From: Glycera tridactyla
Taxonomy: Eukaryota
Length of the DNA stretch: 64,000 nt
Assembly (NCBI GenBank): GCA_965644265.1
Contig: OZ286472.1
Location: 45,198,001 to 45,262,000, forward strand
Reading direction: 5' to 3'
Position numbers and translations under genes: made by a program. Under the pieces are notes generated by a model that did not search any database, was not told where the DNA came from, and saw only the letters and a program-made list of their open reading frames with translations. Below, piece by piece: positions 9,848 to 61,262 of the stretch (positions are counted from its first letter, which is position 1; each line of letters opens with the position of its first letter).

Positions 9848-9851
9848 CTTT

Positions 9852-11495: not shown

Positions 11496-11538
11496 TATGT
11501 GAATTCAGTCCCCTAAGGAGGTACTTTCTATTCACATA
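11496..11538 (-). ncRNA. Structured RNA motif, copy A (inter-ORF spacer)
   Basis: Perfect 9-bp outer stem UAUGUGAAU/AUUCACAUA enclosing AGAAAGUACCUC-CUUA-GGGGACUGA. Confidence 0.65.
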
Positions 11539-11953: not shown

Positions 11954-11994
11954 GGTCAAGTTCAGCCCCCGAATGAGGTACTTTCTACATGACC
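11954..11994 (-). ncRNA. Structured RNA motif, copy B (inter-ORF spacer)
   Basis: Outer stem GGUCAUGU/ACUUGACC (7 of 8 pairs) enclosing AGAAAGUACCUC-AUUC-GGGGGCUGA. Confidence 0.65.
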
Positions 11995-12134
11995 TCCAAT
12001 AGCCCAACCAGCATGGCCATCCCATGTTATATTGATACTATCTACCCAGAAGCAGGAATATCATTTTAATTCTTATATTTGTTACGATATGAATGACTTC
12101 ATTTTTCTTGACTTGAGCTTATGTGTGACTCCCT

Positions 12135-13073: not shown

Positions 13074-13407
13074 CTGTAGCAATCAAACATTTTCATATGA
13101 GCAAACAAATTCGCCTTCGCAGTATAGTTTGCGTGTATTTGCATTTCAATTGGACTATTTTCAAAAAGGTCATGTTGCTAGGTCATTCGTGATATATGTG
13201 GGTCTTGCGTGTTCATTGACCCGTGTCAATTCTACTATATTATACCTGCGCTTTGACCTATTTTGATTTGACGCGGTATCGAAGTTTTATCATTCAGTAA
13301 TATTTAGTTTAGACAATGTCTATCTTTACTAACCTTAATACGCTTTCCTGGTTCTCTGTTCCATTCGTGGAATTCATCTAGACTTCACTTCAGTTGGTCT
13401 ACGACAC

Positions 13408-30803: not shown

Positions 30804-31040
30804 CTATTTCTTGAAGCCCTGTGCGGCCTGTGCAGCTCGCCGGAAGGCACTGATGACACCTAGTGGCTGGAGGAGACGTTTGCGGAGCTTCTCTGTTTTG
30901 TCAATCACCATCTTGTTGGCCGGATCGACATCAAGAGAATGTTTCGCCTCGATTTTACGAGCTTTGAGGAAGCCCTTAGCGATAGCATCCCCTACATACA
31001 TCGTCTCACCCGTCCTCGTGTTCTTGAATGCACCATTTTC
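30804..31040 (-). CDS. Terminal coding exon of giant plectin/plakin-repeat protein
   Basis: Acceptor ttttctgcag, phase 0; ENGAFKNTRTGETMYVGDAIAKGFLKARK...FRRAAQAAQGFKK*. Confidence 0.9.
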   Translation of the reverse strand, partial: ENGAFKNTRTGETMYVGDAIAKGFLKARKIEAKHSLDVDPANKMVIDKTEKLRKRLLQPLGVISAFRRAAQAAQGFKK

Positions 31041-31526
31041 CTGCAGAAAACGAACGGACACATAGTAAGCAATTTATTTCTTCTACCGTCATGTGACGCA
31101 CCAATGAAATACTGAAGGTTTGGTTAGGCATGCAAGTCATGAGGGGCAATCCTTGTTATGAATATTCGCAATTCCCGATGTTATAGAGATAGTGATATGC
31201 GACATATGATTTCACCAGCTGCATTTACAACTGGGGAATATCACCTAGCATACCTTGTCACCATAGTTTAGAGTAGACTTCAGCATCTATTTCGTCAGTT
31301 CACTCATTCTATTAATTCATCTATCTATGCAATCACTTGTTTCATCCACGTTAACTCATCAACCCATCCAGTAATTCATGCATGGATTCCCCCACTCGCA
31401 TTCCTTCCTGTGCTGCATTCATTGTGGATTCTAGTTCCCATTATTTCCAGTTATTTGTTTTCCATCCTTTCTCTGATATCCATTGATCTCTTTGTTCAAT
31501 CATTGTCGTTCTGATTGTTTGCCTAC

Positions 31527-31700
31527 CTTATCAATGATTCCACGCTTGACAGCCTGGGCAAAAGTGATTTGTTTCTTCTGTCCCAGGTCAACCACAGCAC
31601 GCACGGCATACGTGGTGGAGATGACTTCCGGCTCTTGTTCTCCGCCGGCTAACTCCGCATCCACCAAACCTTTCTCTATAGCATCGGCGATCAGCATCTC
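31527..31700 (-). CDS. Plectin-repeat exon
   Basis: cctgcag|EMLIADAIEKGLV...VRAVVDLGQKKQITFAQAVKRGIIDK|gtaggc; 174 nt, phase 0-0. Confidence 0.9.
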
Positions 31701-32185
31701 CTGCAGGTACATCAATCACCACCACCATCAACATCACCATCATCAGCAACAACAACAACAACAATAATGACTACACCACAAACAATGTAGCAACTGCGAC
31801 AGAAACAGCTGTGCTATCCGCCGATTTGCGCTATTTCCACATGAAGGATTCTCTATACCCTTATTGTATCTGGATATTGATTTAGATTTTATACCCTCTA
31901 ATACAGGCTTGTGTGTCAAGAGACATATCGAGGGTAATGGCCTCAGGCAATAACATGTTTCATCGTGGCGAAAATGATGTTTCAGAGGAGATCGAGACTC
32001 GAACATGAGACACATGCAAATTATGATATTACAATCACTCTTCTTGGTTCATCTGTCGACTAACTTTTCAAGAAGACCCATATCTTCAAGAAGACCCATA
32101 TCTTCGGCGGCCATATCTTCAAGAAGACCACAGCCAGTTATAGGTGGGGCCTACGTAATGGACTGTCGAGGAACGAGATACTCAC

Positions 32186-32346
32186 TCTGCGTGACTGTCT
32201 GTCAGTGAAGATTCCATGTTGACTGTCCAGGATGCCTCTACTTTCCGCATCTTTCTGTGGGAGCTTCTCTCCTGTCAGCGTATCGGTGACCGTCTTGACG
32301 TCATAGTCGCGAGCGGCGTGTCGGATTGTCTTCACAGTGATTATAC
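32186..32346 (-). CDS. Plectin-repeat exon
   Basis: ttacag|(G)IITVKT...VTDTLTGEKLPQKDAESRGILDSQHGIFTDRQSRR|gtgagt; 161 nt, phase 1-0. Confidence 0.9.
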
Positions 32347-32356
32347 CTGTAATAAA

Positions 32357-32563
32357 GTGGGTGGAGTGAGTGATTGAGTGAGTGAATGGGTGAGTGAGTG
32401 AGTGAGTGAGTGAGTGATTAAGTGAGTGAGTGAGCGAGTGAGCGAGTGAGTTGATGAGTGATTGGGTGAGTGGGTTAGTGAGTAAGTGAGTGTGTGAACG
32501 GGTGAGTGGGTGAGGAAGTGAGCGGGTGGGTGAGTGGGTGGGTGGGTGAGTGAGTACGTAAGT
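32357..32563. repeat. (GAGT/GGGT)n intronic microsatellite running into an assembly gap
   Basis: Direct observation. Confidence 0.95.
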
Positions 32564-32806
32564 NNNNNNNNNNNNNNNNNNNNNNNNNNNNNNNNNNNNN
32601 NNNNNNNNNNNNNNNNNNNNNNNNNNNNNNNNNNNNNNNNNNNNNNNNNNNNNNNNNNNNNNNNNNNNNNNNNNNNNNNNNNNNNNNNNNNNNNNNNNNN
32701 NNNNNNNNNNNNNNNNNNNNNNNNNNNNNNNNNNNNNNNNNNNNNNNNNNNNNNNNNNNNNNNNNNNNNNNNNNNNNNNNNNNNNNNNNNNNNNNNNNNN
32801 NNNNNN

Positions 32807-32945
32807 ACTTCTCCTCTCGGGATCTCTGCGTTCTTTTGAATCCCATCTTGATAAGACCCTGTGTCATGGCCGCGGATATTGGTATAGTCTCTCCAGAGTC
32901 AGGATTCACGTACATGCCTTCACCCAAATTAAGTATACCCACGGC
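32807..32945 (-). CDS. Plectin-repeat exon, 3' end lost in N gap
   Basis: gtctgcag|AVGILNLGEGMYVNPDSGETIPISAAMTQGLIKMGFKRTQRSREEK.., phase 0 start. Confidence 0.88.
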
Positions 32946-33620
32946 CTGCAGACAAAAAATAGGCAAATACATTGTCTTGTCAGTTCGTTTTTCAAAAGGA
33001 TTCGCCTGCACATAATTCTGTTCCTGGCATGATCTTCTACTCACAGTATGCCTCATAGGTGATGCCATGAATGGCGTTCACTGCGATCAATTGCACATTG
33101 TTTCGTCCTGCATGCGGCAATTCTGATCTCTTCATGGAAAACCAATGCCCGATGAACTGCACATGGCATAGATCGTTTCTTCACTTCGCTAGCGGAATGA
33201 TGTGAGCTCAGGAGTCATTGGCTCAAAATGTAGCGTTTCTGGACATGAAGCTTCTAGGAGAACTTTATATATATGATGAGTACGTCCATGATGTACATAA
33301 CTTTCTCCACTGCAGGTCCTAGTGCAGGCTTCACTGCATCGCTCCACCCCGACAGTTCCTCTGACATGTCATGCAAAATATATGTGACATGCCTAAGAAG
33401 CGATGTGGAGACCAGGATCTGAATGCTGGCTCCATCCTTTGATCATTCAGGTTTCAAAATGCCTTTCTCTTTATGGCAATTTAAAATCATGGAAATAAAA
33501 TTAGACAGATGACGTGTTTTGTGAAGGACTATCTTACTGACGATCCTGTGCGAGACAGGACGGAAGCTGAGATGAGGATGAAAGATATGAGCCCCAGAGA
33601 TGGGTTGCTTCATCACTCAC

Positions 33621-42200: not shown

Positions 42201-42644
42201 AGTCTGATATTCCTTTTCTGATAACCAATATGATTTGTATAACATATGAGAATCGGTAAGTCTTCCTTCTCGCAGACTTTCATTTATCCTTCTTCATTTT
42301 GGGGCATTGGCGTATGTCAAAATGTGAAGGAAACAGAAATATTCAACTCATGCCCGCAATGCACTGTGCAAGATCGTGAATGACATCAACACTGTGCTTC
42401 TAGGTACAACTGGTGAACGACGTGTTATATGATAATATTGGAGTGCACCGTGAGACATTAAAAAACTATAACCTTCGTTAGTGGCCATTCCATTAAATTC
42501 TGGCTACACTCGAAATAAAATCAGGTAGCTTCAATTTCCATGTTTCTCTCGAAAAAAAACTGGGATCACTGAAGTCACCTATTTCAGTTCGAGATGCCAC
42601 GATTTCATTAAACTATGCCAAAGTGTAGACATCAGCGCTAGTAC

Positions 42645-42923
42645 CGATTATCTGACCATCAGAGCCGATGGTTGCAAAGTCTTCAGTCGACATTCCCTGA
42701 CTTCCCTGGGAGGCAAACGAGAATCCGTCAGTACTTCCACGCCCGCTTCCATCAAGCCCACCCTGATTAGGGCCTCCGTGACCCCTCCCGTCGGCACCCT
42801 CGCCGTTGATGAAACTCCCGTCGGCATTTCTGCCGCCATAAGCCAAGCTCCCGTCAGCATTCCTCTGGCCATCCTGACCGGCGCCATCAGCTCCAGGCCC
42901 AGAAGCACCGCCGCGTACGCCAC
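42645..42923 (-). CDS. Gly-rich symmetric exon with NADGS/GADG repeats
   Basis: caatgtag|(G)GVRGGASGPGADG...; phase-1 donor candidates end the exon at 42657 or 42645. Confidence 0.75.
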
Positions 42924-45900
42924 CTACATTGATTGGAGGAGCCAATATTTGGGATTTATTCATGGGGTTGGATAAATGACCGAAAACGTACCTTGCATCA
43001 CAAGTCCCTCGCTATATACAATGGATAAGTGATAATACGAATTCTGCTGTTGTCCTTGCTTCCGATGATTTTTTAGCTGCTGCTATGGATGGCTTCAGTA
43101 GTGATATTTGTGTTTGTTTGTTTGTTTGTTTGTTTAGGTGAGTTGCATGGTGGTTGTGATGGAGATTTAGGGAATTGTGCTGGGGACATCGCCTGCACGT
43201 TGGATGGGTTCTGATCATGATATGACACGAGGTGACTGCCGTAACAACATCGTCTTAACATCAGTTATGGATGTAGAAATGATAACGGCATTAGCGATGT
43301 CAGTGTTGTTGTTCGGGATGGTGATGATGATGGCGGTGGTGCTGGTGGTGAACTTTGTCTGGAGTCTATTCTATATCGGGCACTAACGAATGTGCAAGAA
43401 GAATCCCTTTGTCGTGATAATGACGGTCATAGATACAAATATAGCCGAAACAGAATTTGCTCATCCTCATGACTAAGTCGAACATACAATGTGATATAAA
43501 TCGCATGACGGGTAATAGTTTCAAAGAATGAGTAATTGTGGGATAGTGCGAACATCAAAAGATAGCATCCCGGATAGGTCAGAGAATTCGTACTCAATTT
43601 CATGTTTGATCTCTTGGCACTACGAGAATGGCCGGTTTAGATTTGCTATCAAAGTAATGTGGAACAGGCCAAATTTGAAGACAGGATTCCCTGGACCATC
43701 GCATACATGAAATTCGACATGTCACAGAACTGGGGTGGCATCAATTCCCAAATTAATCTACAGATCGAAGAATGTAATTCACAAAAATCATCGATCAGCC
43801 TCCAATTTCATTTCATGATGAGGAAAAAGGTGATCTGGAACAAGGTGAATTCTGAAGAAAAACAATAAATCAATAGCAAAAGGTATGTATTTGCACAGGA
43901 TACAGAGCATCAGTTGACTCTGTTACAAAGCAATCTGCTACAATGCAAAAAGATCATAGGGGATCACTATTCTCGATGCTGGGGAAAACATACGAAAATG
44001 GCTATTAGTATTTGTTGATAGATAGTATCAATGTCATGATAGTGTATCCCATTCCGTGTACTGTACCGAATCAGGGGGGTACTGGGACTCCTCAGATATT
44101 CTACAAGACCTATTATGCAGGGATGCAGTCGGCCACCCCCTCCCCAGTTCAGTACACTCATACCCTGGTGAAATAGGGATTTTCCGCGGACGGATTTGTA
44201 TCGATGGTGTCTTTTAATAATATTCTTTACTTGTTACAGGGAGATGTTCAACGTGAATGATCAACATCATTCTATTTTCAGGCACATATGTTGATTCAAT
44301 GTTCATCAAACGGCTTTCTGGAAAATATCAAGTGCTTCATACCTGGTATGGTGAAATTAGGATATCGTTCGGTGATATTCGAACTACATGCACAAAGCTT
44401 TAGGGACATAAGCATCATGGCTTTGAAATCTCACAGGATGGTGAACGTGTCATAGATCACGAGACGTCACTATAAATCATGCCATGAGAGTACTGCCAGC
44501 AAGCAAATACATTCTGGCAGACATCCATCCTACATCGTCATTATTTTCCAAGGCAAATCTGATGATGCAATGCCAAAAAAATGATTCTAAGATATGCTCG
44601 AAAGTTTTTGCACACCTAATTGCCTGGTCGAAAAGGCGATGCGACTGATCATGTCTCTTGACTTGTTATAGATTTTGAGTTCCCCTGCGCCATGATATAA
44701 TTACAATTTCTCCTCGGATAGGAGATCCACATTTGTGAACGATATACAATCCTCAGTTGCATGCTCTTCATTCGAAACAATGATTGAAATATCATACATA
44801 CATTACGCATCGACTATAGGGATCAGATATGATTGTTTGACTCCTGAATTTCTAACTTGCAATAGAAAAGAGTCCTGTGCAATCTGTCCTCCAGTAAAAA
44901 AATGTCATATCGCCAGATGGATATCATTTATAGTCCATATACCTTCTGTATCGATTCAAAGGCTGCATCTGACTCCTATGATCTGTGAACGAAATAACAT
45001 ACCAGTCCACGAGGAAGAAAGAAGCTCGAAATGGTCACGGATACATTTTGTATGTGAGTAATTACAGTGATATTCATGGTCATGATCGAGGCTTCACAGA
45101 AAATTGTGAATGCCCAAAGCAATGCCCGTGATCCAGGACGAAGTTCAGATTATCGCAATATCAGCCTAATAACATTCTTCTATGATTAAATCACCCTGAA
45201 CACGTCTATCAACGAACCATGGCACATCTGTAGCATCTTCTGATTATTCATTGTATCTCTAATCTACCCTGCCATGTCCATCATTCTTTATCACCATCTG
45301 TACATCCTACTAAACCTATCGGAGCTAGTTCTTTCACAATTCTTATCAGTCAACATACAGTCAACATATATCTTCGTCTAAGGTATATCAATAAGCCTAG
45401 TTGCTAGGATACGTGATATTAAATTGCACATGATAGAATCGGCCCTTTCTCTTCATAATAGGTCCTCACAAAACACGTGAGGTTGGAGCAGTAGAGCGCA
45501 AAACTTCATACCTCTCCATGATGAAAGCCCTCCCAAACTTTACTGTCACTCCTCAACAGTCATCGCTGTGTACCTTGATATCAGTGTGATCCCCAAACCA
45601 GTAATACAGATTTTTGTCACCAAGCATATCCAGTTTTTTTTTTCACTCTCACCTCTCCAGAGAGTACAGTTTTCCTGTATGCTGTATAGCCTGAACGCGG
45701 ACCTATCTGACAGTTTTGCCCCCCTTTCCTCAGTGCTGAGCTCAACACACATAAACAGGCATGTGTCACACATCGCCAGGGCTGGTTGATGGTGTAAGTA
45801 CCTGGTGGATTAAGCAGGCGCTATAACAAGTAACCACAAACAAGTCACAAAGATGTCTCCTAGGCATATACACGTGTGGGTGCAAGCACAAGAGTGAAAG

Positions 45901-47194
45901 GTTTTAAATTCAATTACTGAAAGTGGTGAGAACCTTATCGTAAGATAGATATACAAGCGGCAGCGGGGAAGATCAGTACTTTGCAGGCTCCGACAATTTT
46001 ACTTGACTGAAATGATATCCATCAGTCAATATATAGTTAGGTACAGGCTCCAGCATATGAGTTTTGACAGTGGCATCATGTTCCAATGAGCAGCCCCCAA
46101 TTAAGCAACAATTCTGCTGGCCTCATTGAGCTTAGCATGATTTGAGGTTCTCCGAATGTAGCTATATACAAAAGTTCATATTTTTGACACCACATCGGAA
46201 TCGACTGCAGATTGTACCTTCGATAACCAATGTTTGTATTGTATGATGTCTTATAATTTCCGATTAAAATTGTGTTCCATGGCTTTAACAAATTGCGTTG
46301 TTCTCGCATCCCATGAGATGAGTAAAAGTGGTGTAAGGTTATCGCATTCACCATGTCTGTGATCTGCACAGAGGCCCTCAATGTTAGGAGTGAATACAGA
46401 TGATTGGTCATACATGTGTGTTATTCATATAAAATCGTCAATTATTAACCAACAAGAAGCAGAAAATACGCGGATAATATATCTGCCACAAAGGCATTTC
46501 AAATGATCATTTGATCATCAGTGCTTTGGTACAAACGAATAGCGTGACCTTGATATGTCCTTGAGCTAGACACAAAATCTAGATGGTCTGTGCGACTATT
46601 CGTCGCTTATTCAGAAATACTTTTGTCACCAATGAAAGCCATGGTTAAACCAAAACCGAATTGGACGATATTTGGTAAAAGGACATCTTGAATGTAACTG
46701 ACAGTCATGTCTCTTTTTCTTCCTACAGTGATTTGACGGATGAACTACATCATACTTGGGATTACCAGCCATTGACGGAGATGCTGTATACTGTTCACCG
46801 AATTCGAATGTGAGCACATCCATGGGCTGCAATACTGACCATGCATCTTCATTTCCCTCCTTAAGCATATATGTGCACCGGGCATTCCAGCCTTGAGGAT
46901 TACAGTAACAAGTGAAATGTGGAGTGTACCAAAGATGCATGATACAGAGAAAGTATATGTAGCCATCATCTTTGGACTCATCTCCTTTCACATTCATTGC
47001 CAGATGCGAGCTTTCTGTCCGCCCTGGGTATCTACGAATTACTTTCTCAGAATGTGACTTTTCTGTCCCTGAACCTAAAATACTTCTTCGCTCACTATGT
47101 CCCTCCGACCCTCTAATGGAGACGTCCTTTGAATGTTGCCTGTTTGCAGTACCCACCGAAGCAGAAGCATGACCTTCATTCAACATATACTCAC

Positions 47195-50100
47195 CCCCAC
47201 CGATTGCGCCAGCAGAATCTGCTGGGGATTCGCTTGAAATCATTTCACCAGATGTGCCCTCCGGGTGAATTTCACTGTCTTTCCACTCTGAATATTCACT
47301 CCGACTTACTGAAGTGTGCGTTACTGTCATATTATCGTCTGAATATGGTTGTCTTAGCTTTACCAGTGCATCTGATGGATCGACCACCGCAATAGTTTTG
47401 CCGTCAGCTGCTAAATCTCCAGCTGCGAATTGAGCTTTCGTTGGGGATTTTGAACTGATACCTGTGATTAGGGAGCCAGGATCCATGACCGTGATGAGGC
47501 TAGGTTGTAATGAACCACCAGCGATAGTGGCATTAGGTGAGATATTGTCTGAACCGTGGTCGATTGGTTTCCCGAAAATAGGTGAATCGATGCGACAGGT
47601 GGAATCATCTAAACTCATATCCGACACATTTTCACTGATTGCGGTTTCAGGATGGCCACTGAATGAAAGTATGGTGCCGTTTGTTTCTTTGTCTTTCGAA
47701 GCAATTGAATGGGACTCATGTAACATGCCAGCTGGAGGGACTTGCTCCTTCGCCTTGCCAATGTCCATTGTGTCCTCTGTTGACAGAGCAGAGTGCTTGG
47801 TGTTTCCATCACCTTCACCTTCACTCGCAGATGGTAGGGAGAATGTAGAGTGGGGTAGTTCAGCAGTTACCGAAGTTTTCTTGTCATACGGATCTCTTTT
47901 TGAGACTGATTTGGATCTGCCATGTTCTAATACGTCTGCTACCTCATCGACTCCTGAAGCTGGATCCAGTCGTATCCCTTCTTCAACACTGGCAACCGTA
48001 GTTCGCATGGTGACATCAGGTATATCACTTACAACCGTATCTGTGGTCCTTTTAGCCATCAATCTGTTCGATGTTTCAGTGCCAACATAGTCAGTTTTTA
48101 GTTCATGTGGATATGTGATCTCAGTGCAGGTTACTGACGAGGTCTTCGAGGGCGTTTCGAACATATCATCTGAGAGGGACGGTATGGTTGAGATCTGTGT
48201 ATTAGGCCTCATTCTATGGAGTGGAGCGGTGTCTACTATCAAATTTTCTGATTCAAATGCTGCAGTTGCTTCTCTCTTTCCCATGATTGACTCGGGGTCA
48301 TTTTTAGTTTGAACTGACCCTCCTGGCCACGATACCTGTGGCTGTGCCGCTATACAAACTCCTGATTCTGAATCTAGTCCTTTATCAATTGGTGCCCCAG
48401 GAAGTGTATCCCTATCGGATACTGCCATAGTTTCTCCATGATCATCATGTGATGTTTCTCTGAGTTCCTCACTTTTGACAACCATCTCTACATTCATTTC
48501 CACATCATCTGTCGTCCCTATTTCTTCAACTGGCTGACTTGAAGTCCCTATTACACCTTTCTGTGTTACCCCTACCTCCGCCAATTCTCCGATGGGTTCT
48601 CCCTCAATAGATCTATCTTTAGATTCAAGTACTGTTATTACATCGATGACATCTGTCTCTATCATATCTTCTGGTATAACTTCCATCTTGACCGGCGTTT
48701 GCTTTGTCGTCGCATTCCTACCACACGTGGTTTGTGTTTTCTCTGCTGCTTCCGCAGTCACTACTGACTCATCTGCGGTAGGGGTTACAATGGCAGGTGA
48801 TGATGGCCTGATTTCAATAATTGCTGAGTCTGTTGATTGTTTTGAATCGAGGTCGGTCTCCATCGTCGTGTGTTTCACATGAGACATCACATGCTCCTCG
48901 CCTGGTGCAGTAGAAGTCCCTATTGATACGTCCTCTTCTTCAATGGACGATCCCTCTACAGCTGGGACTGATTCAACTTCGATCTTAGTGATTGTTTTGT
49001 CCATCATTGTTATCGATTCTGGTCTGGGCTCAGTCAGAGTTCGCTCAAATCCAGCAATCTCACCCTCGATCGGTGGCAGTAAAATCGATGAAGATGCATC
49101 TCCCGTTTCAGAGAGCATTTTCTCCATGTTTGGGGGTGAATTGACTCTGCTTGCAGTGACTACTGTCATTTGAACTGATTCAAATTGTGGATTGATTGTT
49201 GTTTGTCTATTGTCTGTATCAGGCATTTGAACTGGTTCTGGTATCGGTTTCAAGCTTGTTTTTCTTGTGTCTGAATTCTCATCAATAACTGGTGTGACTG
49301 GTGCATCTTTGATCTCATTTGACGACTTTTCCAAAGTCGGCATGGTTTCCACACCGATTTGGATATCTGTTAGGTCCTTCTCAACCAATGTTCGCCCTGA
49401 ACCAGGCTTCGTATCATCGACTGATGATACTGAAATTGAAGTTGATCCATCATTTCTATTTGGCACTTTCTCCATGATTGGTGTCGATTTAACTTTGATT
49501 TCAGTAACCACTGTGTCTGAGTCCAGCTGTTGTGGCACTTTTGTTTGTCTACCTACGGTATCCGACATCTGAACCGATTCCGGTTTTGATTCAATATCAG
49601 ATTTCACATGCATAACTGGTGGGACTGGAGCTGATAATGATATATTCTTGGTTGAATGAGGCAAATCCTGTACAGTCGGCGTATATTCCGCTTTACTTTC
49701 TGCATTTGCGATGTTCATTTCTGGTACTGCTTCCAGTTTTGCCTCTATTTGTTTCACATCAGACTTCCATCTCAGGGTTGATGGATTAGATGTTGCTTTC
49801 AATGGATCCTCTTTTTCATCGGTCATTTCCTCTGCAGCTGTCTCTGCTTCAACTATGGTTTCAGTAACTGTCATATCTCTCCTCTTTCTTGATTTTTCTT
49901 TGGGCTCAATCGATGATCGTTCAAGAGAATACCTGAGATCCAGCACTGGTGACACTGAAATTGCTGGTGATGTATTCTTAGTTTCATTGAATATTTCCTC
50001 TATACTTGGCACTAATTCATCATCGATTTCAGTGCTTGCTGCTTCGGTGATTTGTAATGATCCCTGCTCCTGCCCCCTCAGGGTTTGTCCATTTGTCACA

Positions 50101-53100
50101 CCTGCCATTTGTACTGATCTTGGTTTTGATTCATCGGCTTCATGTTTTGTGTCCAGCTTCACGTCAATACTTGGTCGTACTGAATTTGGTGATGGTGCAT
50201 TCTTGATTTCACCAGGCAAACTTAACATGGATTCAGTTTTGATTTCAGTGATTACCGTGCCCATCTCTTGCGTCGATTTGTTTTCAGGCTCTTCTGTTTT
50301 CAGTTTCCTGTCAGTATCTCTCATCTGCATGGAATCTTGTACTGGCTCCATTCTTTCATTCTCCATATCTATCATTTTGATTGATTCAAGTCCTGTCTCC
50401 GCCAATGTTCGCTCCATGCCAAATTCCATATCAACAATTGAAGAGGCTGAAGTCGGTGATGATGTTTCCTCGATCCCACTGGGCATGTCTTCTACAGTCG
50501 GTGTAGATTCAACTTTTATTTCTGATACTGCTTTATCCATCTTCGGTAACGATTCTTGTTTAGGCTCCATTCCAATTCCTTCCTGACCAGACTTCACAGC
50601 CTTAACTCCTGGACCTGGGATCACTATTGATGCTTCAGCCTCTTCACTGGTCAATTTGACCATAGCTGGAGCTGATTCAATTTCCATAGTCAGTGTGCTT
50701 GTCAATTTCATCGATCCTGAATTGGATTCAATTATAGTTTGCTCAGAACTATGATTAGCCTCATGAATGGGTGATTCTCCGAGTATTTCCTCCATATTTG
50801 GCACCTTGTCGACACTACTTTCAATGACTGCTGTGTCAATGATACGCATTGATTCTTGCTGTAGCTGTGGTGGGACGGAAGTAGATACTGATGCATCCTC
50901 GGTTTCATTGAGCATGTCTTTCACAGTCGACATGGATTCAAGTCTGTTTACTGGTCTGTCTCTCTGTTCGAGCTCCATTGTTTTTTGCTCCAGATCTGAC
51001 TTCAAATCCTTGACTGAGGGAATGGTAGCATTCTCAAATTGATTATATGATTCTTCCATAGTTCCCAAATTCACTTCAATTTCAGTAACTGATGTGTCTG
51101 TCATCTGTAAAGATTTTGGTTGTGACTTCCTCATTGTATTTTCATTCTTCATTTCCAATGAATCTGACTGTGGCTTCACCAGTGTTTGTTCCGTTTGTGA
51201 CTTGATAGTAGGTGAGACTGACATTGGTGAGGATATATCCTTGTTCTCTTTGGACAGGTTTTCCATGGTTGGCACGGAATCAACTTTGAGTTCAGTGACT
51301 ACTTTGTCCATCTCTTGTATTGGTTTTTGTTCGGGCTCCAATTCGATTTTTTTCACATCAGACTCTACAACCTCGACTAGTGGTGGTGAACTTGGTACTA
51401 CTGTTTCACTGGTCAATCCTTCCATAGCTGGAAATGATTCGACTCTGATTTCTGTGATCTTCGTGTCAGTCATTTGTATTGATTCTGATTTCGGCTCGTT
51501 CAAAGTTTGCTCAGAATCAAACTTGGTATCATCGGCAGGAGACACTGCTATTGGTTTTGATGCATCCAAGGTTTCATTAAGCATCTGCTCCATCGTTGGT
51601 ACCGATTCAATTTTGCCTGTGAGCGACAATGGTCCCTGGTGTGACTCAGTAGGTGTTCCCTCAATCACTTTATCAGTCGAATGCAACTCTCCCATGGTTC
51701 TTCCCAATTTTACGACGTCAATTCCAGTAACTGATCCGTCGGTCTTCTGTGAAGATTCTGGTTGTGACTTCATTGTTGTTTGTACGATTGCTTTCTGCCC
51801 TATTCCTGATAAATCTGACTGTGGCTGCACCCCTGCTTGATCCATTTGTGACTTCACATCGATAATTGGTGAGACTGACATTGGTGCGGATATATCCTTG
51901 TTTTTATTTAGCAGGTTTTCCATGGTTGGCACAGAACCAACATCGATTTCGGTGACGGCTTTTTCCATATCTTGTGATGGTTTTTGTTTGGGCTCCGTCC
52001 TGATTTCATTCACATCAGTCTCCACAACCTCGACTAGTGGGGTTGAACTTGCTACTGCTGTTCCACTGGTCAATTCTGCTATAGGTGGATATGATTCCAC
52101 TGTAATCTTCGTGTCTGTCATTTGTATTGATTCTGATTTGGGCTCATTCAGAGTTTGCTCAAAATCATCGGTAGGAGACACTATTATTGGTTTTGATGCA
52201 TCCATGGTTTCATTAAGCATCTGCTCCCTCGTTGGTACCGATTCAAGTTTGTTGTCGGTATCTAATTTGTCTGCGAATGAAAATGGTCCCTGGTGTGACT
52301 CAGTAGGTGTTCCTTCAATCACATTATCTGTCAAATGCGACGCTCTCATAGTTGTTCCCAATTTCACGTCAATTTCAGTATCTGATTTGTCGGTCTTCTG
52401 TAAAGATTCCGGTTGTGACTTCATTGTTGTTTGTTCAATTGCTTTCTGTCCTATTCCTAATGAATCTGACTGTGGCTTCACCCCTGTTTGTTCCATTCGT
52501 GACTTCACATCGATAATTGGTGAGACTGACATTGGTGCGGATATATCCCTGTTCTCATTTGGCAGGATTTCCATGGTTGGCACAGAACCAACTTTGCTTT
52601 CAGTGATGGTCTTCTCCATCTCCCGCATTGTTTTTCGTTTGGGCTCCATTCTGATTTCCTTCACAACCTCGACTTGTGAAGCTGAACTCGCTACTGCTGT
52701 TCCACTGGTGAATCCTTCTATAGCTGGAGCTGATTCCACCTTGATTTCTGTAATCTTCGTGTCTGTCACCCATATTGCTTCTGGTTTGGACTGACTCCCA
52801 GTCTGCTCAAAACAAGACTCAGCATCATCAGCGGATGACACTACTATTGATCTTGATGCATCTGTGGTTCCATTGAGTGACCGTTCCATCGTTGGTACAG
52901 ATTCAGGTTTTATTTCAGTATCTGTCGTGTCTGTGATTGAAAATGGTCCAAGTGGCTCAATAGCTGTTCCTTCAATTGCCTTATCCGTCATATGCGATAA
53001 TCCACTACTTGTTCCCAATTTCACATCAATTTCAGTAACTGACGTGACTGTTATCGGTGAGGGTTCTGTCTGTGACTTCATTACTGTTTGTTCAATTGCC

Positions 53101-56100
53101 TTCTCCTTCACTTTCACTGAATCTGGCTGTGGGTTCACCACTGTTCGTTCCATTTGTGACTTGACATCGATGACTGGTGAGACTGAAATCGGTGAGGACG
53201 TGTCTTTGCTTTCATTGGGCCGGTCTTTCATAGTTGGTACAGAATCAACTTTGATCTCGGTGACTGTGTTGTTCATCTCCTGTATGGGTTTCCGTATAGG
53301 CTCTATCCTAATTTCCTCCACATCAGACTTCACCACCTCGACTTGTTGGGCTGGACTCGTCACCGATGTTTCAATGGTCAATCCTCCTGTAGCTGAAGCT
53401 GATTCCACTCTGATTTCTGGAATCCTTGTGTTTGTCAAATGTATCGATTCTGTTCTGGGCTCGTTCAAAGTTTGCTCAAAATCTGATTCAACATTATCGG
53501 TGGGTGACACTGCTATTGTTTTTGATCCATCTATAGTGTCATTGGGCATTTGCTCTATCATTGGCACTGATTCAGGTTCGATGTTGGTATCTATTGTGTC
53601 TGTGATTGGCAATGATCCCGGGTGTGCCTCAAAAGTTGTCTCATCAATTGCTCTATTTGCTGATTTTATCTCCTGTTCAAGCTTCGTTTTCCTCAAACCA
53701 AGCTTTAAATATCGTAATGGCGGGGCTGATGCATTTTCAAATTCCTTTTGTGATTCTCCTGTAGTTGGTACCGATATACCTTTGATTTCAGTACCTGATT
53801 CATCTCTCACCTGTGAAAATTCAGGTGCAGATTGGTCGATTGGCTTATCTGTCATATGTACTGCTTCTGATTGTGTCACCGTTAATACTTGTTCCGTGTC
53901 AGACTTCGCATCCAACCTTGAAGAGGATGAAATGGGTAGTGATGTATCCATGGTTTCATTGGGCATGTATTTTGAGGTATCCTCGGATTCGGTTTCGACA
54001 TCAGTTACTGATCCGCCCGTCGTTTGCAATGATCCCTGCCTGAGCTCCATTGTTTCCTCCAAACCAGACTTGAAATGTTTGACTGATGGGACTGTTGCCC
54101 CCTTGAATCGATCTTGCAATTCTTCAACAGTTGGCATTGATTCCACTTTGATTTCAGTCACCAATGTATCTGTCATCTGTGGCGAATCCAGTTGTGACTT
54201 TATTGGTGTTTGATCAATTGCAACACCCTTCATTGCCGCTGAAACTGGCTGTGGCTCTACAGGTGTTTGTCCCATTCGTGATTTGACATCAATAGTTGGT
54301 GAGACTGAAATTAGTGATGACGCATCCTCGGTCTCATTGGGCATGTCTTTGACAGTAGGTATTGATTCAACATTGATATCAGAAACTGTTACGTCCATCT
54401 CTTGCATTGATTCTCCTTTGGGCTGCATTTCAACATTTTTTGACTCAGACTTCACAACCTGGACTTGTGGTCCTGATATGGAAATCGATGTATTTGCTGT
54501 TTCACTAGTCATCCCCTTTATAGCTGGTGCTGATACAACATCGAATTCAGTAATTGTAGTGTCTGTCATTTTTATTGATTCGGTTGTGATATCAGTTGAT
54601 ACCACAACTTGCTTTTTTGATGATTCCTCCCTGGGCTCCAGTGTTTTCTTCAAATCGGACTCGAAATGCTGGAGTGATGGGACTGTTGCGCTATCGAATC
54701 GATCTTGCAATTCTTCAACAGTTGGGATCGATTCAACTTCGATTTCAGTCACCGATGTATCTGTCATCTGTGGCGAATCCAGTTGTGACTTTATTGGTGT
54801 TTGTTCAATTGCAACACCCTTCATTGCCGCTGAAACTGGCTGTGGCTCTACAGGTGTTTGTCCCATTCGTGATTTGACATCAATAGTTCGTGAGACTGAA
54901 ATTAGTGATGACGCATCCTCAGTCTCATTGGGCATGTCTTTGACAGTAGGTATTGATTCAACATTGATATCAGAAACTGTTACGTCCATCTCTTGCATTG
55001 ATTCTCCTTTGGGCTCCATTCTAACTTCTTTCGCATCAGACTTCACAACCTGGACTTGTGGTACTGGTATAGATATCGATGTATTTGCTGTTTCACTAGT
55101 CAGCCCCTCAACCGCTGGTGCTGATCCAAGATTGATTTCAGTGATTGTAGTGTCTGTCATCCTCATCGATTCTGATTTGGGCTCAATTAACGTTTGCTCA
55201 AAACCAGGATAAACATCCCGGGTGGATGATACCGAAGTAGATGTAGATGCATCCAAGGCACCACCGGGTATTCTCTCCTTAGTTGGTACAGCTGTCATGT
55301 CAGTGACTGCGTTGTCTGTGATTGGCAACGATCCCAGGTGTGACTCCATAGCTGTGTGTTCGATGGCTGAAACTGTTTTATGTACTGTCTCAGTATTTCG
55401 ATCCATGTCTATTTTTTCCATGTCAGACTTCGCATACAGTACATTTGAGGTTGATATTGGTAGTGATGCATCCTCGGATTTGCTAGGCATTTTTTTCACC
55501 TTTGGCATAGATCTAGTTTCGATTCCAGTATCCGATATTGATATTGGTACATCTTCACATTCATCGAACATTTTCTCCATATTTGATACCGAGTCCACTT
55601 TGATCTCAGTGACTGCCGTGTCAGTGACATGAATTGCTTCATGCTGTGGCTTTGGTGAGACTGATACAGAAAACTGTGATGATACATCTTTGGTTTCATC
55701 GGCCATGTCTTTTACAGTCGGTATGGATTCAGCTTCGTTTTCACTGTCTGATCTTTGCACTGATTTCTGTCCAGTCTCCATTGTTCTTTGCTCTGAACCA
55801 GCCTTCAAATCCCGAACTGACAGTACTGTTGCATCCTCGAATTGATTTCGCGATTTTTCCTCAGTCATTGCTGATTCCACTCCTGTTTCAGTAAGTGAAG
55901 TATCTGTTTTCTGTAAGGTTTCAAATTTGGACCTCACTACTGTTTGTCCAATTGCTGCATCCTCAATTGCCATTGAATCTGACAGTGGCTTCATCAAATT
56001 TTGTTCCGTTGATGCCTCCATATGCATAACTGGTGAGGATGCGTCCTGGCTTTCATTGGGCATATCTCCAACAGTCGGCATTGCTTGAACTTCGATATCA

Positions 56101-59100
56101 TCAATCACTATGTCGATTTCTTGTGATTTTCGCATGGGCTTCATATCAGAGCTCAGAACCTTGACTGGTCGAGCAAAAATTGCTATTGGTGCATCAATGG
56201 TTCCCTCTATGGCTGGAGCTGATTCGACTTTGATTTCAGTAGTTGTCGTGTCCGTCATTTGGACTGGTTCTGTCCTGGGGTCAATCAGAGTTTGCTGCTT
56301 TACTGGTGAGGAAGAAATAGATGTTGATGCATCTGTGACTTCATGGAAAGTTGGTTCTGATTCAACTTTGACTGTAGTGACTGACGAGTCGGTGATTTGC
56401 GGTAAACCCACTTGTGGCTCCTTTGTATTCTTCATATTCACTGACCCTTGATCTTGTCCAAGGTTTGTTTGTACCATGCCAGACTCTTTATCCGTGAGAG
56501 ATGCGACTGAGATTGGTAATGATGCGTCATTGATTGCAATAGTGGAGCCTGGCACGGTCTGCGTACATTCAGCTCTGATTCCAGTATTTGATCGTTGTTT
56601 CGGCTCCGTTGCTGTATGTTTCATATCAGTCTTCACAACCTCCACAGATGGAGCATAAATCCCTATTGATGTATCCTTCATTCCACTAGTCAATTCTTCC
56701 GTTGCTGGGACTCTGAATTCACCAACTGATGATTCTGAAATTGAAATTGATGTTGGAGCATCCATAGTTTCATTGAGCGATTTCTCCATATTTGGTACCG
56801 ATTCAACTTTGATTTCAGTGACTGCTGTGTCTGTGATTTGCGTTGATTTCTGCTGCTGCGTGTCTGTTATTTTCAATAATTCTGGTTTATGATCGAACAA
56901 ACTTTGCCCCAAACTAGACTTTGCATTCTTGATTGGGGGCACGGAGACTGATGTTGACGCATCCTCTGTATCCTCATTGAGCACATTCCCCGTGTTTGAT
57001 ACCAATTCATCCTTGTTTTCAGTGACTACTGTGTCTGTATTTTTCACTAATGTGTGATGTGGCTCTACTGCTCTTAGTACATCTTCCGCATCTGTCGTTT
57101 GTACTGATTCTGGACATGGTTTCAAGGTTACCTCCACATCAATACCTGATGGGTCTGAGACCGGTATCAATTTATCCCTGGTTTCATCGAGCACGTTCTG
57201 CACGAATGGCGTGGATTCAACTTTGATCTCAATATCTGCTAAGTTCATCTCAGACTCGATATCTTTGACTGAAGCATCTACTGATTCCTTTTCTCGTACT
57301 CCTTCTGTTTTCTGTTGCATGGCTGTTAATGGTGTTGATTCTGAATTAAATTTGGATTCGGTAACTTTAGATTTTGGTGCCTGGTTGTTTTTTAATCCAG
57401 TTGGTTCCATCTCCGGAAGTAGTTGATCAATAACAGCTGCATCAACTTCTCTGACTCTCAGCGGGTTGAACTGAGCTGGCATGGAATTCACAGGTTCACT
57501 CTCATTCATAGAAATTTCTGAAACTCTATCCTTTTTCGTCAGATTGTCCGATATTATTCTCTCTGTCTGAGCCACACTCCTGTTCATTTCCTGCTCGGGT
57601 TGAACTCTTTGAGCTGCAGGCGTCGATGCAACTGCGACTGGGGTCTCTATTGCATCTATTGCTCCAACATGTTCTGAGCTGGGATCTTCCCGCAAGTCAA
57701 TCACAATATAATCATCCATTTTGTCATTCGCATTGGGACCCTGGCTACTCGTGAAATGGAATAGTCTTTTGCTAATGTCGTCCTCACCGCCAGAATCTTC
57801 TGTTTCGTGTGGAAGTCGACTGACTCCATGTGAGGTCATATTTGAGGCACCTGGTATCTCTGCCTTATTGAACCCTGCATTAATATCATCGGTAATTCGA
57901 AGTGATCGAGACTGAGTAGTGGTTTCTTCATTTCCTGTGTTATGTTTGGGATCTACGTTGTCTTTGACGATATGCTTCGGTTGATACTGAGCTACAGTTT
58001 GTACCCTGCCATCCATATCCTCGAATTCCTTCAAAGATTTGCTCTTGATTACATCTTGAGAAGCGTAACTGTTAGATGTGCTCGGTGGTACCTCATTGGG
58101 GCCTATCACATTGGGATCACCTGTTACAGAATATGCAGAACTAGCACGGCTCAGAGTTTTACTGGCACTGTCAGCATCTGTGTTAGCACTCTTCCTATCC
58201 CTTGTATCGGTACTCGAGTTGACCGATATCTGCCTGACTATGACACTGTCATTGTGACTTATCGATACCGTAGTGCTATGCTCATTGTCTTCACAAGGAA
58301 TCACATTCTGAGCTTCATCAACAAGGAAGTCTATCACTAAATACCCACTACTACCACTGTCACTACCCACAGCTAGATCGTGCTTGTGTGATGAGCCGGG
58401 AAGGACAGGGCCTTTCTCCACCCGGGGACCTATCAAAGGAAGATCGTCACTTCTGAAACTTGGTACTGAACTTTCGCCGGGTTCTACCAACTCTACTTTG
58501 TCTTTCGAGTACCTACTTGGTTCATCCATAGCCGACCAAGAGGTTGGGAAACTCCGAGTTACAGATGCACCCATAGTATCTGCATGCTCGTTTTCTACTG
58601 TACTACCAACTTCCCTAGTGGCTATAGCCATCACTGGCCCACCCCCTGGATCTGATATCATTATATCCGTGCCCTCTAGAGCAGTCTTCCCTGTACCTTT
58701 GCTCGCTACTGTACCTACATTTGGTCCCTCCCTTTTCCCTATCTGTGCTTTTCGAAAGCTTTCTGTGAGTATATTGCCATATACAGCTGAGTAACCGTTC
58801 CCTGGTATCACTATTACGGGGATCTTTTCTAACACGATGTGAGTTTCAACGTGTTCTGTGGCTACATCAGTGGCAACATATGCTGACCAGAGCTGCAGAG
58901 TAGTATCCCCATGGATGTGCTCAGGCATCAGAACATCCGGTGAGCCAGAGATTGTTTTTCCCCCACCGAAAAACATGGCTTTCAATTTCTTCTTTATTTT
59001 AGCACCGATCCCTATGTCTTCATCAGCCTTTCTAGGGTCTGATGCCTGACTGTCATTGCTCGATCCCTTACTCAATCGAATAGACACATTACTTTCTGAG

Positions 59101-59674
59101 GGGCTATCCAAATGGGCCTCACTGCCTACTTCCACTGATACATCAACAGCACTGAATTGTGACTCAACACCAATATGTTCCGATATGTTTGTATCATGTA
59201 GCTGCGAGTCAGATTCGGGTATTATATCACTACTACTCCTCGGAAACTTTGGTGGTTCCTGGGTCTCTGATCCAGTACTCCGTGTAGCTCCCTCTACCGT
59301 ATCCTTCTGTATGTGTCCAGTACTCACAGGTCGATAAACTGTTCCATCAGACCTTACTGTATTCTCTTCCACTGGTATGTCACATATAATACTCCTATCT
59401 CCACCCGTGGCCACATCCCACTTCCGTTTTCTGGTTAATCCATGATCACCCATCGTGTTACCCACTGCACCATATTGTTCACTTTGTCCAAGTGATATTG
59501 ACTGTGAAATGTTAGTATAAGGAATATTTCCGGCAGATGTTTTTTCCTCTCTGGTGAGAGTATTGTCCTCCCGAAAGTCTTGCAGCATGGTCGCACTTCC
59601 GTAGTAGGCACTGCTTCCGGCACTGGCATTGCTCTGCATGAGTGAGGCCGGTCTTCCTGTAGCTCTCCTAGCAC
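47195..59674 (-). CDS. Giant (~12.5 kb, ~4160 codons) repetitive acidic S/T/E/P-rich exon
   Basis: Uninterrupted ORF 46626..59639; acceptor ggtccag at 59675 in phase 1 matches the upstream exon. Best donor G|gtgagt ends the exon at 47195 (length 12480, symmetric); alternative phase-1 donor at 46766, or read-through to the stop at 46626. Confidence 0.85.
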
Positions 59675-61053
59675 CTGGACCATATAGAACGTTAAATCAA
59701 GCGTCCATTCAATTGAATATGATTTTCTTTTCATACATTAAACTACGTAGGAAGGATTTCCGTGAACTGACTGCATGGACAAGGCACCTCCCATCTTTAG
59801 TGCACATGGACAATGACAAAATAGTCCTAAAACTGTGAAACATACCGACATTTCTTTGATTCATCCTTATAATGGTATAGTGCATAAAGAACATCTTTAT
59901 CAATAATAGAGTCAGATCGCCCCAATCTGGAGAGATTGAACCAAAGAGCACGATCCATGTCAAATAGAATGATCAATGGGCACCGTGACATTGTGTGTGA
60001 TGGTTATCAACATGTGCTTCTTGTTTCGGGTCTATCCGACAAATGAGAGGCCAAGGGTAGACTGAAAGATTCCCCAGAGTATCATTTTGTATTATTTGTG
60101 AATTGTTAGGTTATTTGGGATCAATGTATTGGCATGGGGCACCTAGACGAAAGCCTAACATATTCTTCCACCCCCCCNNNNNNNNNNNNNNNNNNNNNNN
60201 NNNNNNNNNNNNNNNNNNNNNNNNNNNNNNNNNNNNNNNNNNNNNNNNNNNNNNNNNNNNNNNNNNNNNNNNNNNNNNNNNNNNNNNNNNNNNNNNNNNN
60301 NNNNNNNNNNNNNNNNNNNNNNNNTTTCACGCTTTCTCCCAAGTATTGGGAACTCAGAAACTTCACAGAAACTAGACGAGGTGTTCAGGCCGAAAATATG
60401 ATGCAAAATGGGAAACAATCCTGATAGGCGGAGAGAGCTTGTCTAGGTGGATGGAAGTCGCATTACCATGACTCTGTATGAGGTTTGTTGTACACACGTG
60501 AAATCGAGGGGATTTACTGTGCTATTCATTGATTATGGATGTCGTATCTCCCTGTTTCAAAGAGGAAAATGAGCACAGTGGACCTGACCGGAATTAGGAG
60601 AAAGAAAAGATGAGAAAACCATTGTCTTGCAATTAACCAGTGCTAGAAAAGAATTGAATTTGTAAGAAGCATGCACATTCTATTCATATATATCATGCAA
60701 GTATTTCTGCTGAAAGAGAAAAGGGGCTATGATAAATCGATGACATTTTGAATCTTTCACAACTCAAGAGAGCAGCGTTAGGAGATGTCTGCACTGATGT
60801 GTGTGTGCTGGAAGAGAGAGAAAAGAATGGAGTTAAACAATGTGGATCTCTACCTTAATACAGCAGCAAAAATGGTATTGAGTCTCCATTGAAGTGGCGA
60901 TTCCCAGTATAGGCTCAATACTAGTGAGACAACATATTTTGCCAGGTTGTTTCTTAGAGGAAATTGTCGATACAAACAGAATGAGTCCCAATTCTTGTTT
61001 TTTGTACAGGAACTCTAATTGGGCGGAATGGATCTTGAATATGGTTGACTCAC

Positions 61054-61262
61054 CTACTGTCACGGCCTGGCTATCGACATCGCCGGTGATGGTCTTGCGT
61101 ACCTGAACGCCATCTACCGTTTCCCACATGGAATCATCCATACTCGAGTCACCGTAGGACATCTCGAAAGAGCCATCTACCGCGCTGGACTCCGACACGG
61201 ATGACTGACCAGCTGGTCGCCGCTGCGCTCCTTCCTCAGCGTCCAGCTCCATCTGCCAGTAC
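61054..61262 (-). CDS. Coding exon of the giant gene
   Basis: cttacag|(K)YWQMELDAEEG...DSQAVTV|gtgagt; 209 nt, phase 2-1. Confidence 0.88.

What the first reader, a model, noticed from the sequence alone, without database searches (positions are those of the whole stretch)
47195..59674. Giant 12.5-kb symmetric exon in a plectin-repeat gene
Seen: more than 4100 uninterrupted codons rich in S, T, E, D, P, V, M and nearly devoid of W, C, F, Y in the repeat core, with a phase-1 acceptor and a phase-1 candidate donor. The flanking exons also join in frame without it (61054 phase 1 to 42923 phase 1). Established analogues: giant alternatively spliced exons in Drosophila shot, giant ankyrins and titin PEVK. 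Inference: a skippable disordered spacer or spring switching the protein between ~800+ aa and ~5000+ aa isoforms, with a repeat family I do not recognise.
Basis: partly seen in the sequence, partly recalled or inferred. Interest (0 to 1): 0.7.

Follow-up and report, generated by a model that had tools for sequence, protein, structure and literature searches.

The report
Giant orphan disordered-repeat terminal exon
A real 13-kb stop-free coding exon encodes about 4,350 residues of acidic, unstructured protein with a new 112-residue repeat and no detectable relatives, but public-run contigs show it running on to its own stop codon, not splicing into the neighbouring plectin-repeat exons.

Summary
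The open frame is real. On the minus strand, 4,356 codons run stop-to-stop (59696-46629), and the locus is single-copy in a 2.04-Gb invertebrate genome. It has three parts: a unique N-terminal region (about 770 aa), about 34 copies of a 112-aa unit made of two ~56-aa halves (residues 774-3678), and a unique C-terminal region. It is acidic (net charge -312), has no transmembrane segment, and AlphaFold gives no fold (pLDDT 53). No relatives turned up in Pfam, PDB, three word searches, a 1.84-billion-protein HMMER search or the ESM Atlas.

- Contigs of four public runs from two studies (probably RNA) pass straight through the proposed donor at 47195. None shows a 47195->42923 junction.
- The frame stays open for 189 codons beyond that donor, where the other two frames have 6 and 18 stops.
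- Depth falls in steps after the stop codon (46626-46628), near poly(A)-signal-like hexamers.
- One run has zero cover between 43400 and 45799, which separates this unit from the downstream exons.

Best reading: a giant 3'-terminal coding exon of an orphan gene, probably joined to a small upstream exon (61252-61054). The 5' junction and the skip could not be tested. The scan has noted other giant disordered exons elsewhere in this genome.

The parts
61054..61252 (-). Candidate upstream coding exon: ATG at 61252, 66 codons plus 1 base, donor GTAG|gtgagt after 61054, phase 1
   Evidence: Sequence and translation. Codon-use log-odds are +0.34 in frame against -0.79 and -1.09 in the other frames, -1.63 just before the ATG and -0.37 after the donor. 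No Pfam hit. No relatives in the word search. The join to the giant exon is inferred, not shown.
59675..61053 (-). Inferred 1.38-kb intron, which holds a masked N run at 60178-60324 that was left untouched
   Evidence: gtgagt at its 5' end and ccag at its 3' end. Not tested with reads.
57378..59674 (-). Giant exon, unique N-terminal part (residues 8-773 of the 4,356-codon frame)
   Evidence: No internal repeats. Single copy in the genome. No hit in 1.84 billion representative proteins or in the Atlas.
48663..57377 (-). Repeat core (residues 774-3678): about 34 whole or partial copies of a 112-aa unit made of two ~56-aa halves, with motif TDTxVTEIKVESxPTVE..NETxDAS..ISVSP..DVKS..EQT..EPK. DNA super-repeat of about 650 nt.
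   Evidence: Self-comparison and iterated HMM. Alignment A1. DNA copies 80, 74, 72 and 70 % identical with growing distance. dN/dS between copies 0.36-1.16. AlphaFold pLDDT 53, no secondary structure.
46629..48662 (-).
   Evidence: No repeats. Single copy. No relatives. The tail has 0 stops in frame against 6 and 18 in the other frames. Contigs of four runs are colinear across it.
47193..47195 (-).
   Evidence: No joint at this place in runs X1, X2, X5 or X6, and the contigs cross it. It is the second-best of 635 GT sites in the frame.
46626..46628 (-). Stop codon TGA of the giant frame
45950..46625 (-). Proximal 3' untranslated region (~0.65 kb), with AGTAAA at 46003-45998
   Evidence: Cover in X5 runs from the frame down to about 45954 and is then zero until 43400. 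Depth in X2 and X6 steps down here. Hexamer found. Frame-breaking indels (-2 at 46477, -1 at 45964) occur here but not inside the frame.
43900..45949 (-). Distal 3' extension seen in three of the four runs, with ATTAAA at 44218-44213 and AGTAAA at 44231-44226
   Evidence: In X1, X2 and X6, contigs continue at similar depth and then drop 3- to 6-fold near 43,950. Hexamers found. The stretch is single-copy DNA.
42616..42963 (-). Downstream G/D/S-rich open frame with its own ATG at 42963.
   Evidence: Translation. One X5 contig covers about 41979-43130 across the acceptor without a break. No Pfam hit.
30849..32954 (-). Plectin/plakin-repeat exons of the downstream gene (32954-32811, 32563-32222, 31715-31503, 31088-30849)
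   Evidence: Pfam Plectin at E 5.4e-06 and 0.0019. tblastn with this genome's own plakin repeats, 43-47 % identical to a paralogue on the same contig.

Best explanation
The 13-kb open frame is the 3'-terminal coding exon of a lineage-restricted gene, not a cassette exon. A small first coding exon (ATG 61252, donor 61054) probably splices in phase 1 to 59674. The frame then runs 4,349 codons to its own stop at 46626-46628, for a predicted 4,415 aa in all. A 3' UTR follows, ending either near 45,950 (after AGTAAA) or near 43,900-44,200 (after ATTAAA/AGTAAA). The product is a cytoplasmic or nuclear protein that is strongly acidic (net charge -312) and intrinsically disordered. Its centre grew by tandem duplication of a 336-nt unit and a ~650-nt super-unit. 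Selection acts mainly to keep the frame open and the composition constant. Inferred, not shown: it works as a long flexible polyanionic spacer or scaffold, perhaps phosphorylated at its many S/T-x-x-D/E sites. This resembles the unstructured tails that giant 3'-terminal exons add to Drosophila giant ankyrins. The plectin-repeat exons 13-16 kb downstream most likely belong to a separate transcription unit.
For: The frame and its three-part build are. Disorder: AlphaFold pLDDT 53, pTM 0.14, no secondary structure; F/W/Y/C 1.7 % and no hydrophobic stretch above Kyte-Doolittle 1.23. X1 has a 7.6-kb contig colinear with 44439-48599 that runs on about 3.4 kb beyond that. Contigs in X2, X5 and X6 also cross 47195. 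No 47195->42923 joint appears in any run. X5 has zero depth over 43400-45799. In X1, X2 and X6 depth drops 3- to 6-fold near 43,950. The runs hold 47-67 % of the sampled words of 10 kb of the exon, about what 1-1.5 % divergence would leave. The runs are probably RNA. Their contigs total 46-88 Mb against a 2,038-Mb genome, and depth varies 12-fold across single-copy DNA. The tail after the donor has 0 stops in 189 codons, against 6 and 18 in the other frames and 5-18 in downstream windows. The only indel listed inside the frame is 72 nt, which keeps the frame. All listed indels after the stop break it. Poly(A)-signal-like hexamers sit where cover ends. Exon 1 is coding-like, with the same acidic S/E/D composition. 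No relatives anywhere. Single copy.
Against: No run is on record as RNA, and the tool marks that label as a guess. Contigs cannot show strand or true ends, and they drop rare variants, so a minor spliced isoform is not excluded. Three of the four runs also cover the supposed intron downstream, which could be unspliced precursor. The last 112 codons are 25 % F/W/Y/C and have non-coding-like codon use in two patches, as if read from former intron. The 47195 donor is a good consensus site and its phase matches 42923. The 5' junction is untested. The proposed function is inference from composition only.
Confidence: 0.58

Rival explanations
1. Independent single-exon gene. Translation starts at the first ATG of the frame (59639, 4,337 aa). 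The gene has its own promoter just upstream, sits beside or inside the first intron of the plectin-repeat gene, and exon 61252-61054 belongs to that other gene or to none.
For: An in-frame ATG lies at 59639, 57 nt after the upstream stop. The frame has its own stop and 3' end. Exon 61054 also joins 42923 in frame. The 59674 acceptor has a weak pyrimidine tract.
Against: Exon 61252-61054 has the same acidic S/E/D composition and codon use as the giant frame, and it ends in a strong donor whose phase fits 59674. X5 covers 42924-43130 contiguously with the G-rich frame, which argues against 42923 being used as an acceptor there.
Confidence: 0.2
2. One reading: a symmetric phase-1 cassette exon (59674-47195) of the plectin-repeat gene. 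It would be included to give a protein of 5,000+ aa and skipped to give one of ~800 aa.
For: Consensus sites and matching phases at all three joins. The last 112 codons of the frame look non-coding in composition. Plectin repeats lie downstream on the same strand. Known analogues exist (shot's 10,497-nt exon, PMC2173965; vertebrate giant ankyrins, PMC7401806).
Against: There is no 47195->42923 joint, and no contig break at 47195, in four runs from two studies. X5 has zero depth between the units. The frame is open for 189 codons beyond the donor, and the first 77 of them are coding-like. The donor is within chance expectation. The paralogous plakin-repeat locus has no such exon.
Confidence: 0.1
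3. Alternative last exon of a shared locus. Exon 61252-61054 splices either to the giant exon, which ends the transcript at its own poly(A) sites, or past it to 42923 and the plectin-repeat exons. This would give two proteins with the same 66-residue head and mutually exclusive bodies.
For: Both joins are in frame. The giant exon behaves as a terminal exon. This is how Drosophila giant ankyrin exons are arranged, at the 3' ends of transcripts (PMC7401806).
Against: The X5 contig crosses 42923 unspliced, and the G-rich frame has its own ATG at 42963. There is no direct evidence for the skip.
Confidence: 0.12

Closest known systems
Drosophila giant ankyrin (Ank2-L/XL) 3'-terminal giant exons
   Same: Very large exons at the 3' end of the transcript. 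They encode repeat-rich, predicted unstructured, extended polypeptide (PMC7401806).
   Different: No sequence similarity and no ankyrin, ZU5 or death domains found upstream. The repeats here are acidic. No microtubule-binding type motif was identified.
Vertebrate giant ankyrin-B/G neurospecific exon and the Drosophila shot 10,497-nt plakin-repeat exon (internal, alternatively included giant exons)
   Same: A single exon longer than 10 kb that carries tandem repeats (PMC7401806; PMC2173965). Plakin repeats are also present at this locus.
   Different: Those exons are internal and spliced on both sides. Here no 3' splice was seen and the frame ends in its own stop. The shot exon encodes plakin repeats, whereas this one has none.
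AHNAK and Futsch/MAP1B-type proteins (from my own knowledge, not checked here)
   Same: Small 5' exons followed by one giant exon, which encodes a central array of ~100-130-aa tandem repeats in a cytoplasmic scaffold protein of roughly 5,000 aa.
   Different: No sequence relationship was detected by Pfam or PDB searches. No PDZ or MAP1 domains.
Mucin PTS exons and titin PEVK
   Same: Low-complexity repeats, poor in aromatic residues, encoded without interruption.
   Different: S+T+P is only 29.9 % and P+E+V+K 33.5 % in the core. There is no signal peptide, no Cys-rich flanks and no Pfam domain.

Membership tests
Plakin / plectin-repeat proteins | Plectin repeats (PF00681) within the same polypeptide | tested here: inconclusive
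   None in the 4,356-aa frame. Repeats occur 13-16 kb downstream on the same strand. No contig links the two, and X5 has a gap in cover between them.
Alternatively spliced (cassette) giant exon | Same phase at acceptor and donor, so that skipping keeps the frame | tested here: met
   Both ends are phase 1, the exon is 12,480 nt, and every join gives GGT. On its own this is expected by chance about 1 time in 3.
Alternatively spliced (cassette) giant exon | Transcripts spliced from the exon's donor to the next exon | tested here: not met
   No 47195->42923 joint in X1, X2, X5 or X6, and the contigs run through the donor. Contigs can miss rare forms.
Alternatively spliced (cassette) giant exon | Transcripts that skip the exon (61054->42923) and transcripts that enter it (61054->59674) | not testable with these tools
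No protein from this locus is in the searched collections.
Giant-exon-encoded disordered repeat scaffolds (a functional kind, not a homology family) | One exon over 10 kb encoding tandem repeats predicted to be unstructured | tested here: met
   13,046 coding nt in one exon, about 34 units of 112 aa, pLDDT 53 with no secondary structure.
Mucin-type PTS domain | S+T+P well above 40 %, a signal peptide, Cys-rich flanking domains | tested here: not met
   S+T+P is 29.9 %, D+E 17.5 %, no hydrophobic N-terminus, no Pfam domains.
Titin PEVK | P, E, V and K make up about 70 % of residues, in ~28-aa repeats | tested here: not met
   P+E+V+K is 33.5 % and the unit is 56/112 aa.

The most novel reading that the evidence does not exclude
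One short 66-residue head exon (61252-61054) is shared by two mutually exclusive bodies. One is a 4,350-residue acidic disordered chain that ends the transcript early. The other is a plectin-repeat cytolinker reached by skipping 18 kb. Choice of poly(A) site or splice site would then switch the locus between two unrelated proteins.
Probability: 0.2. Interest if true: 0.6.

Novelty: new member of a known kind. Interest (0 to 1): 0.4.

Why it matters
It adds a well-delimited case of a very large, expressed, taxonomically restricted disordered protein built on a repeat found in no other protein searched. Earlier notes of this scan report other giant disordered exons in the same genome, in a filamin gene, in RIM and in an orphan MYND protein. 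I did not check those notes. If they hold, the genome may be a good place to study how multi-kilobase disordered coding exons arise by tandem duplication and are kept open with little sequence constraint. For annotation, the frame should not be merged into the plectin-repeat gene on phase compatibility alone.

Tried and rejected
- **Pfam:** a scan of the whole frame gave only sub-threshold noise.
- **Word searches:** nothing for the whole frame against proteins of 2,400-7,600 aa, for the exon-1 ORF, or for the C-terminal 677 aa.
- **HMMER search:** the N-terminal 1,200 aa against 1.84 billion representatives gave 0 hits. No transcript-derived proteins were therefore available for the look-up of encoding contigs.
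- **Other libraries:** ESM Atlas on the N- and C-terminal parts gave no usable hit. PDB with the frame and with the repeat profile gave nothing below E 0.2. Rfam on 40-64 kb gave nothing.
- **Paralogues:** none in the own genome. The nearby plakin-repeat paralogue shares only the plakin exons.
- **Upstream flank:** 40 kb upstream showed only simple repeats and an LTR retroelement, and no cytoskeletal domain ORFs of 110 aa or more.
- **Loose end at 43054:** first taken for a splice junction, then rejected. It is an allelic indel variant of the local sequence. The contig breaks at 42914-42943 fit diverged haplotypes, not the 42923 acceptor.
- **Tandem Repeats Finder:** it misses the array, because the copies are too diverged.
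- **Charge-hydropathy plot:** borderline and uninformative.
- **Codon-use log-odds for the tail:** dominated by amino-acid composition, so inconclusive for the last 112 codons.
- **Dispersed repeat as the cause of the depth peak at 44002-44523:** rejected, because the stretch is single copy.
- **Operators' rules:** N runs were left as they are.
Full report
**Observation.**
On the minus strand the window holds an open frame of 4,356 codons between stops, from 59696 to 46629. The stop is TGA at 46626-46628 and the first ATG is at 59639. Stop-codon odds here are about 0.058 per codon, so chance is excluded. About 770 N-terminal and 680 C-terminal residues are non-repetitive and equally open, so this is not merely a stop-free satellite.

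F+W+Y+C make up 1.7 % of the repeat core. The proposed acceptor (ccag|GTGC, first base 59674) and donor (GGG|gtgagt, last base 47195) exist and are both phase 1. The exon is 12,480 nt. The joins 61054/59674, 47195/42923 and 61054/42923 all give a GGT codon.

**Anatomy.**
The window is G000:C34:45198001-45262000 of a 2.04-Gb animal genome. The genome is rich in simple repeats, LINEs and an LTR element with a Baculo_F-type env, which points to an invertebrate.

Self-comparison and an iterated HMM show about 34 whole or partial copies of a 112-aa unit between residues 774 and 3678. Each unit consists of two related ~56-aa halves, with consensus TDTxVTEIKVESxPTVE..NETxDAS..ISVSP..DVKS..EQT..EPK (alignment A1).

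At the DNA level, neighbouring ~650-nt super-units are 80 % identical. Identity falls to 74, 72 and 70 % with distance, the signature of tandem duplication. dN/dS between copies is 0.36-0.5 for old pairs and about 0.8-1.2 for young ones. Constraint on the sequence is therefore weak, while the frame itself is strictly kept.

The protein is acidic (D+E 16.7 %, K+R 9.5 %, net charge -312). It has no hydrophobic segment above a Kyte-Doolittle mean of 1.23 and no signal-peptide-like start. S/T-x-x-D/E sites are slightly enriched: 138 against 117 +/- 9 in shuffles. AlphaFold2 on one unit with the 25-row repeat alignment gives pLDDT 53, pTM 0.14 and no secondary structure. The charge-hydropathy plot is borderline. 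I read the chain as intrinsically disordered, with the caveat that the alignment is shallow.

**Relatives.**
None were found:
- Pfam.
- PDB, with the whole frame and with the repeat profile.
- Word searches with the whole frame, the exon-1 ORF and the C-terminal 677 aa.
- HMMER with the N-terminal 1,200 aa against 1.84 billion representatives, 0 hits.
- ESM Atlas for both unique ends.
- The genome itself, where the locus is single copy.

**Is it a cassette exon of the plectin-repeat gene?**
Plectin repeats are real downstream on the same strand, at 32954-30849. The evidence is Pfam (E 5.4e-06 and 0.0019) and tblastn with this genome's own plakin repeats. A paralogue 195 kb away has them in one 247-aa ORF and has no giant exon nearby.

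To test the link I laid contigs of four public runs on 42600-48599, the only read-laying run allowed. The runs come from two studies and two organism labels. They hold 47-67 % of the sampled words of 10 kb of the exon, about what 1-1.5 % divergence would leave.

None is on record as RNA. I take them for RNA for two reasons. Their contigs total only 46-88 Mb against a 2,038-Mb genome. Depth also varies up to 12-fold over DNA that is single copy in the genome.

The results were:
- No joint 47195->42923 in any run.
- X1 has one 7.6-kb contig colinear with 44439-48599 that runs on about 3.4 kb further into the exon. Contigs of X2, X5 and X6 also cross 47195 and the stop codon.
- In X5, cover runs from the exon down to about 45954 and is then zero until 43400. 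An AGTAAA lies at 46003.
- In X1, X2 and X6, depth stays similar to about 43,950-44,400 and then drops 3- to 6-fold. ATTAAA and AGTAAA lie at 44218 and 44231.
- X5 has a separate 1,152-nt contig over about 41979-43130.
- The G-rich frame at that acceptor has its own in-frame ATG at 42963.

The sequence points the same way:
- The frame has no stop in the 189 codons after the donor. The other two frames have 6 and 18, and downstream windows have 5-18.
- The first 77 of those codons look coding.
- The donor is within chance expectation: 4 GTRAGT sites against about 6 expected, and second-best of 635 GT sites.
- The one indel listed inside the frame is 72 nt, present in X2, X5 and X6 and absent in X1 and the window. 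Every indel listed after the stop breaks the frame.

The major transcript form therefore treats the giant frame as a terminal exon with its own stop and alternative 3' ends.

**What weakens this.**
- The RNA nature of the runs is inferred, not recorded.
- Contigs drop rare variants and cannot show strand or true ends.
- Three runs also cover the downstream 'intron', which may be precursor RNA.
- The last 112 codons are 25 % F/W/Y/C with non-coding-like codon use in two patches, as if the tail were young or read from former intron.

**The 5' side.**
Exon 61252-61054 (MELDAEEG...) is coding-like in one frame only. Log-odds are +0.34 against -0.79 and -1.09, with -1.63 before the ATG and -0.37 after the donor. 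It shares the acidic S/E/D composition of the giant frame. It ends in a strong donor whose phase fits 59674. I therefore favour exon 1 plus the giant exon, 13,245 coding nt or 4,415 aa. No reads were available to test this, and a start at the internal ATG 59639 remains possible. No further domain-bearing ORFs of 110 aa or more were seen within 40 kb upstream.

**Mechanism.**
Shown: an expressed, single-copy, 13-kb uninterrupted coding exon with a new tandem repeat.

Inferred: a long polyanionic, flexible cytoplasmic or nuclear chain that acts as a spacer or scaffold and may be phosphorylated on acid-directed sites. It grew by unequal crossing-over and is selected for frame and composition, not for sequence.

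**Comparison.**
In function and gene layout it is closest to giant exons at the 3' ends of transcripts, such as those of Drosophila giant ankyrins. Those exons encode unstructured, extended polypeptide (PMC7401806). From my own knowledge, AHNAK and Futsch-type genes are also close.

It differs from the internal giant exons of vertebrate ankyrins and of shot (10,497 nt, encoding plakin repeats; PMC2173965). No 3' splice is seen here and no plakin repeat is encoded. It is not mucin-like (S+T+P 29.9 %) and not PEVK-like (33.5 %).

**Context from the scan.**
Earlier notes report other giant disordered exons in this genome, namely s1-302912 (filamin) and s1-340436 (MYND orphan). They also report giant plectin-repeat exons (s1-345420). 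I confirmed only the last in part, as open frames of 3,890 and 14,946 aa on C1. The other notes are unchecked leads.

N runs were left untouched. The retroelement upstream was only observed.

**Verdict.**
The disorder and the unknown repeat family are supported. The skippable-cassette link to the plectin-repeat gene is not supported by the data available, though it is not excluded.

Noticed in passing
window 47369-47370: Contigs of X2, X5 and X6 carry 72 extra nucleotides (24 codons, in frame) here. X1 and the window do not, so this is a segregating in-frame indel inside the giant frame.
   Followed up: partly
G000:C1:136386840-136441753 (+): Two adjacent open frames of 3,890 and 14,946 aa are packed with Plectin repeats at a 300-nt period.
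   Followed up: partly
L012 / G000:C34:45003547-45003915 (-): A small plakin-repeat paralogue sits in one 247-aa ORF. It is 43-47 % identical to the split exons at window 32954-30849. No other exon of the window matches near it.
   Followed up: partly
window 41979-43130: In X5, the only run with a clean gap upstream, one 1,152-nt contig covers this block. It crosses the predicted acceptor 42923 and passes the stop of the G-rich frame at 42613-42615. Haplotypes here differ by 3.5-5 %. It is unclear whether this is a first exon, a retained intron or a transcript of the other strand.
   Followed up: no
window 44002-44523: Contig depth is 2-4 times that of the flanks in X1 (125 against 30) and X6, although the stretch is single copy in the genome. 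It could be 3'-end bias at a distal poly(A) site or a separate small transcript.
   Followed up: partly
window 46629-46964: The last 112 codons of the giant frame are 25 % F/W/Y/C, unlike the other 4,200, yet they are stop-free and single copy.
   Followed up: partly
window 49660-55209 (+): The strand opposite the repeat core carries open frames of 265-472 codons. This is probably a by-product of the biased codon use of the sense strand.
   Followed up: no
L022:6892-9225 (-) and L023:816-7854 (-), 27-40 kb beyond the window's right end: An LTR retroelement with long gag-pol-like ORFs and a 778-aa ORF that matches Baculo_F (E 2.7e-14). It was observed only.
   Followed up: no
window 8018-15438 (-): LINE ORFs lie here: a 501-aa ORF, a 676-aa ORF and a 315-aa ORF with a GDSL-lipase/esterase match (E 8.3e-07).
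   Followed up: no
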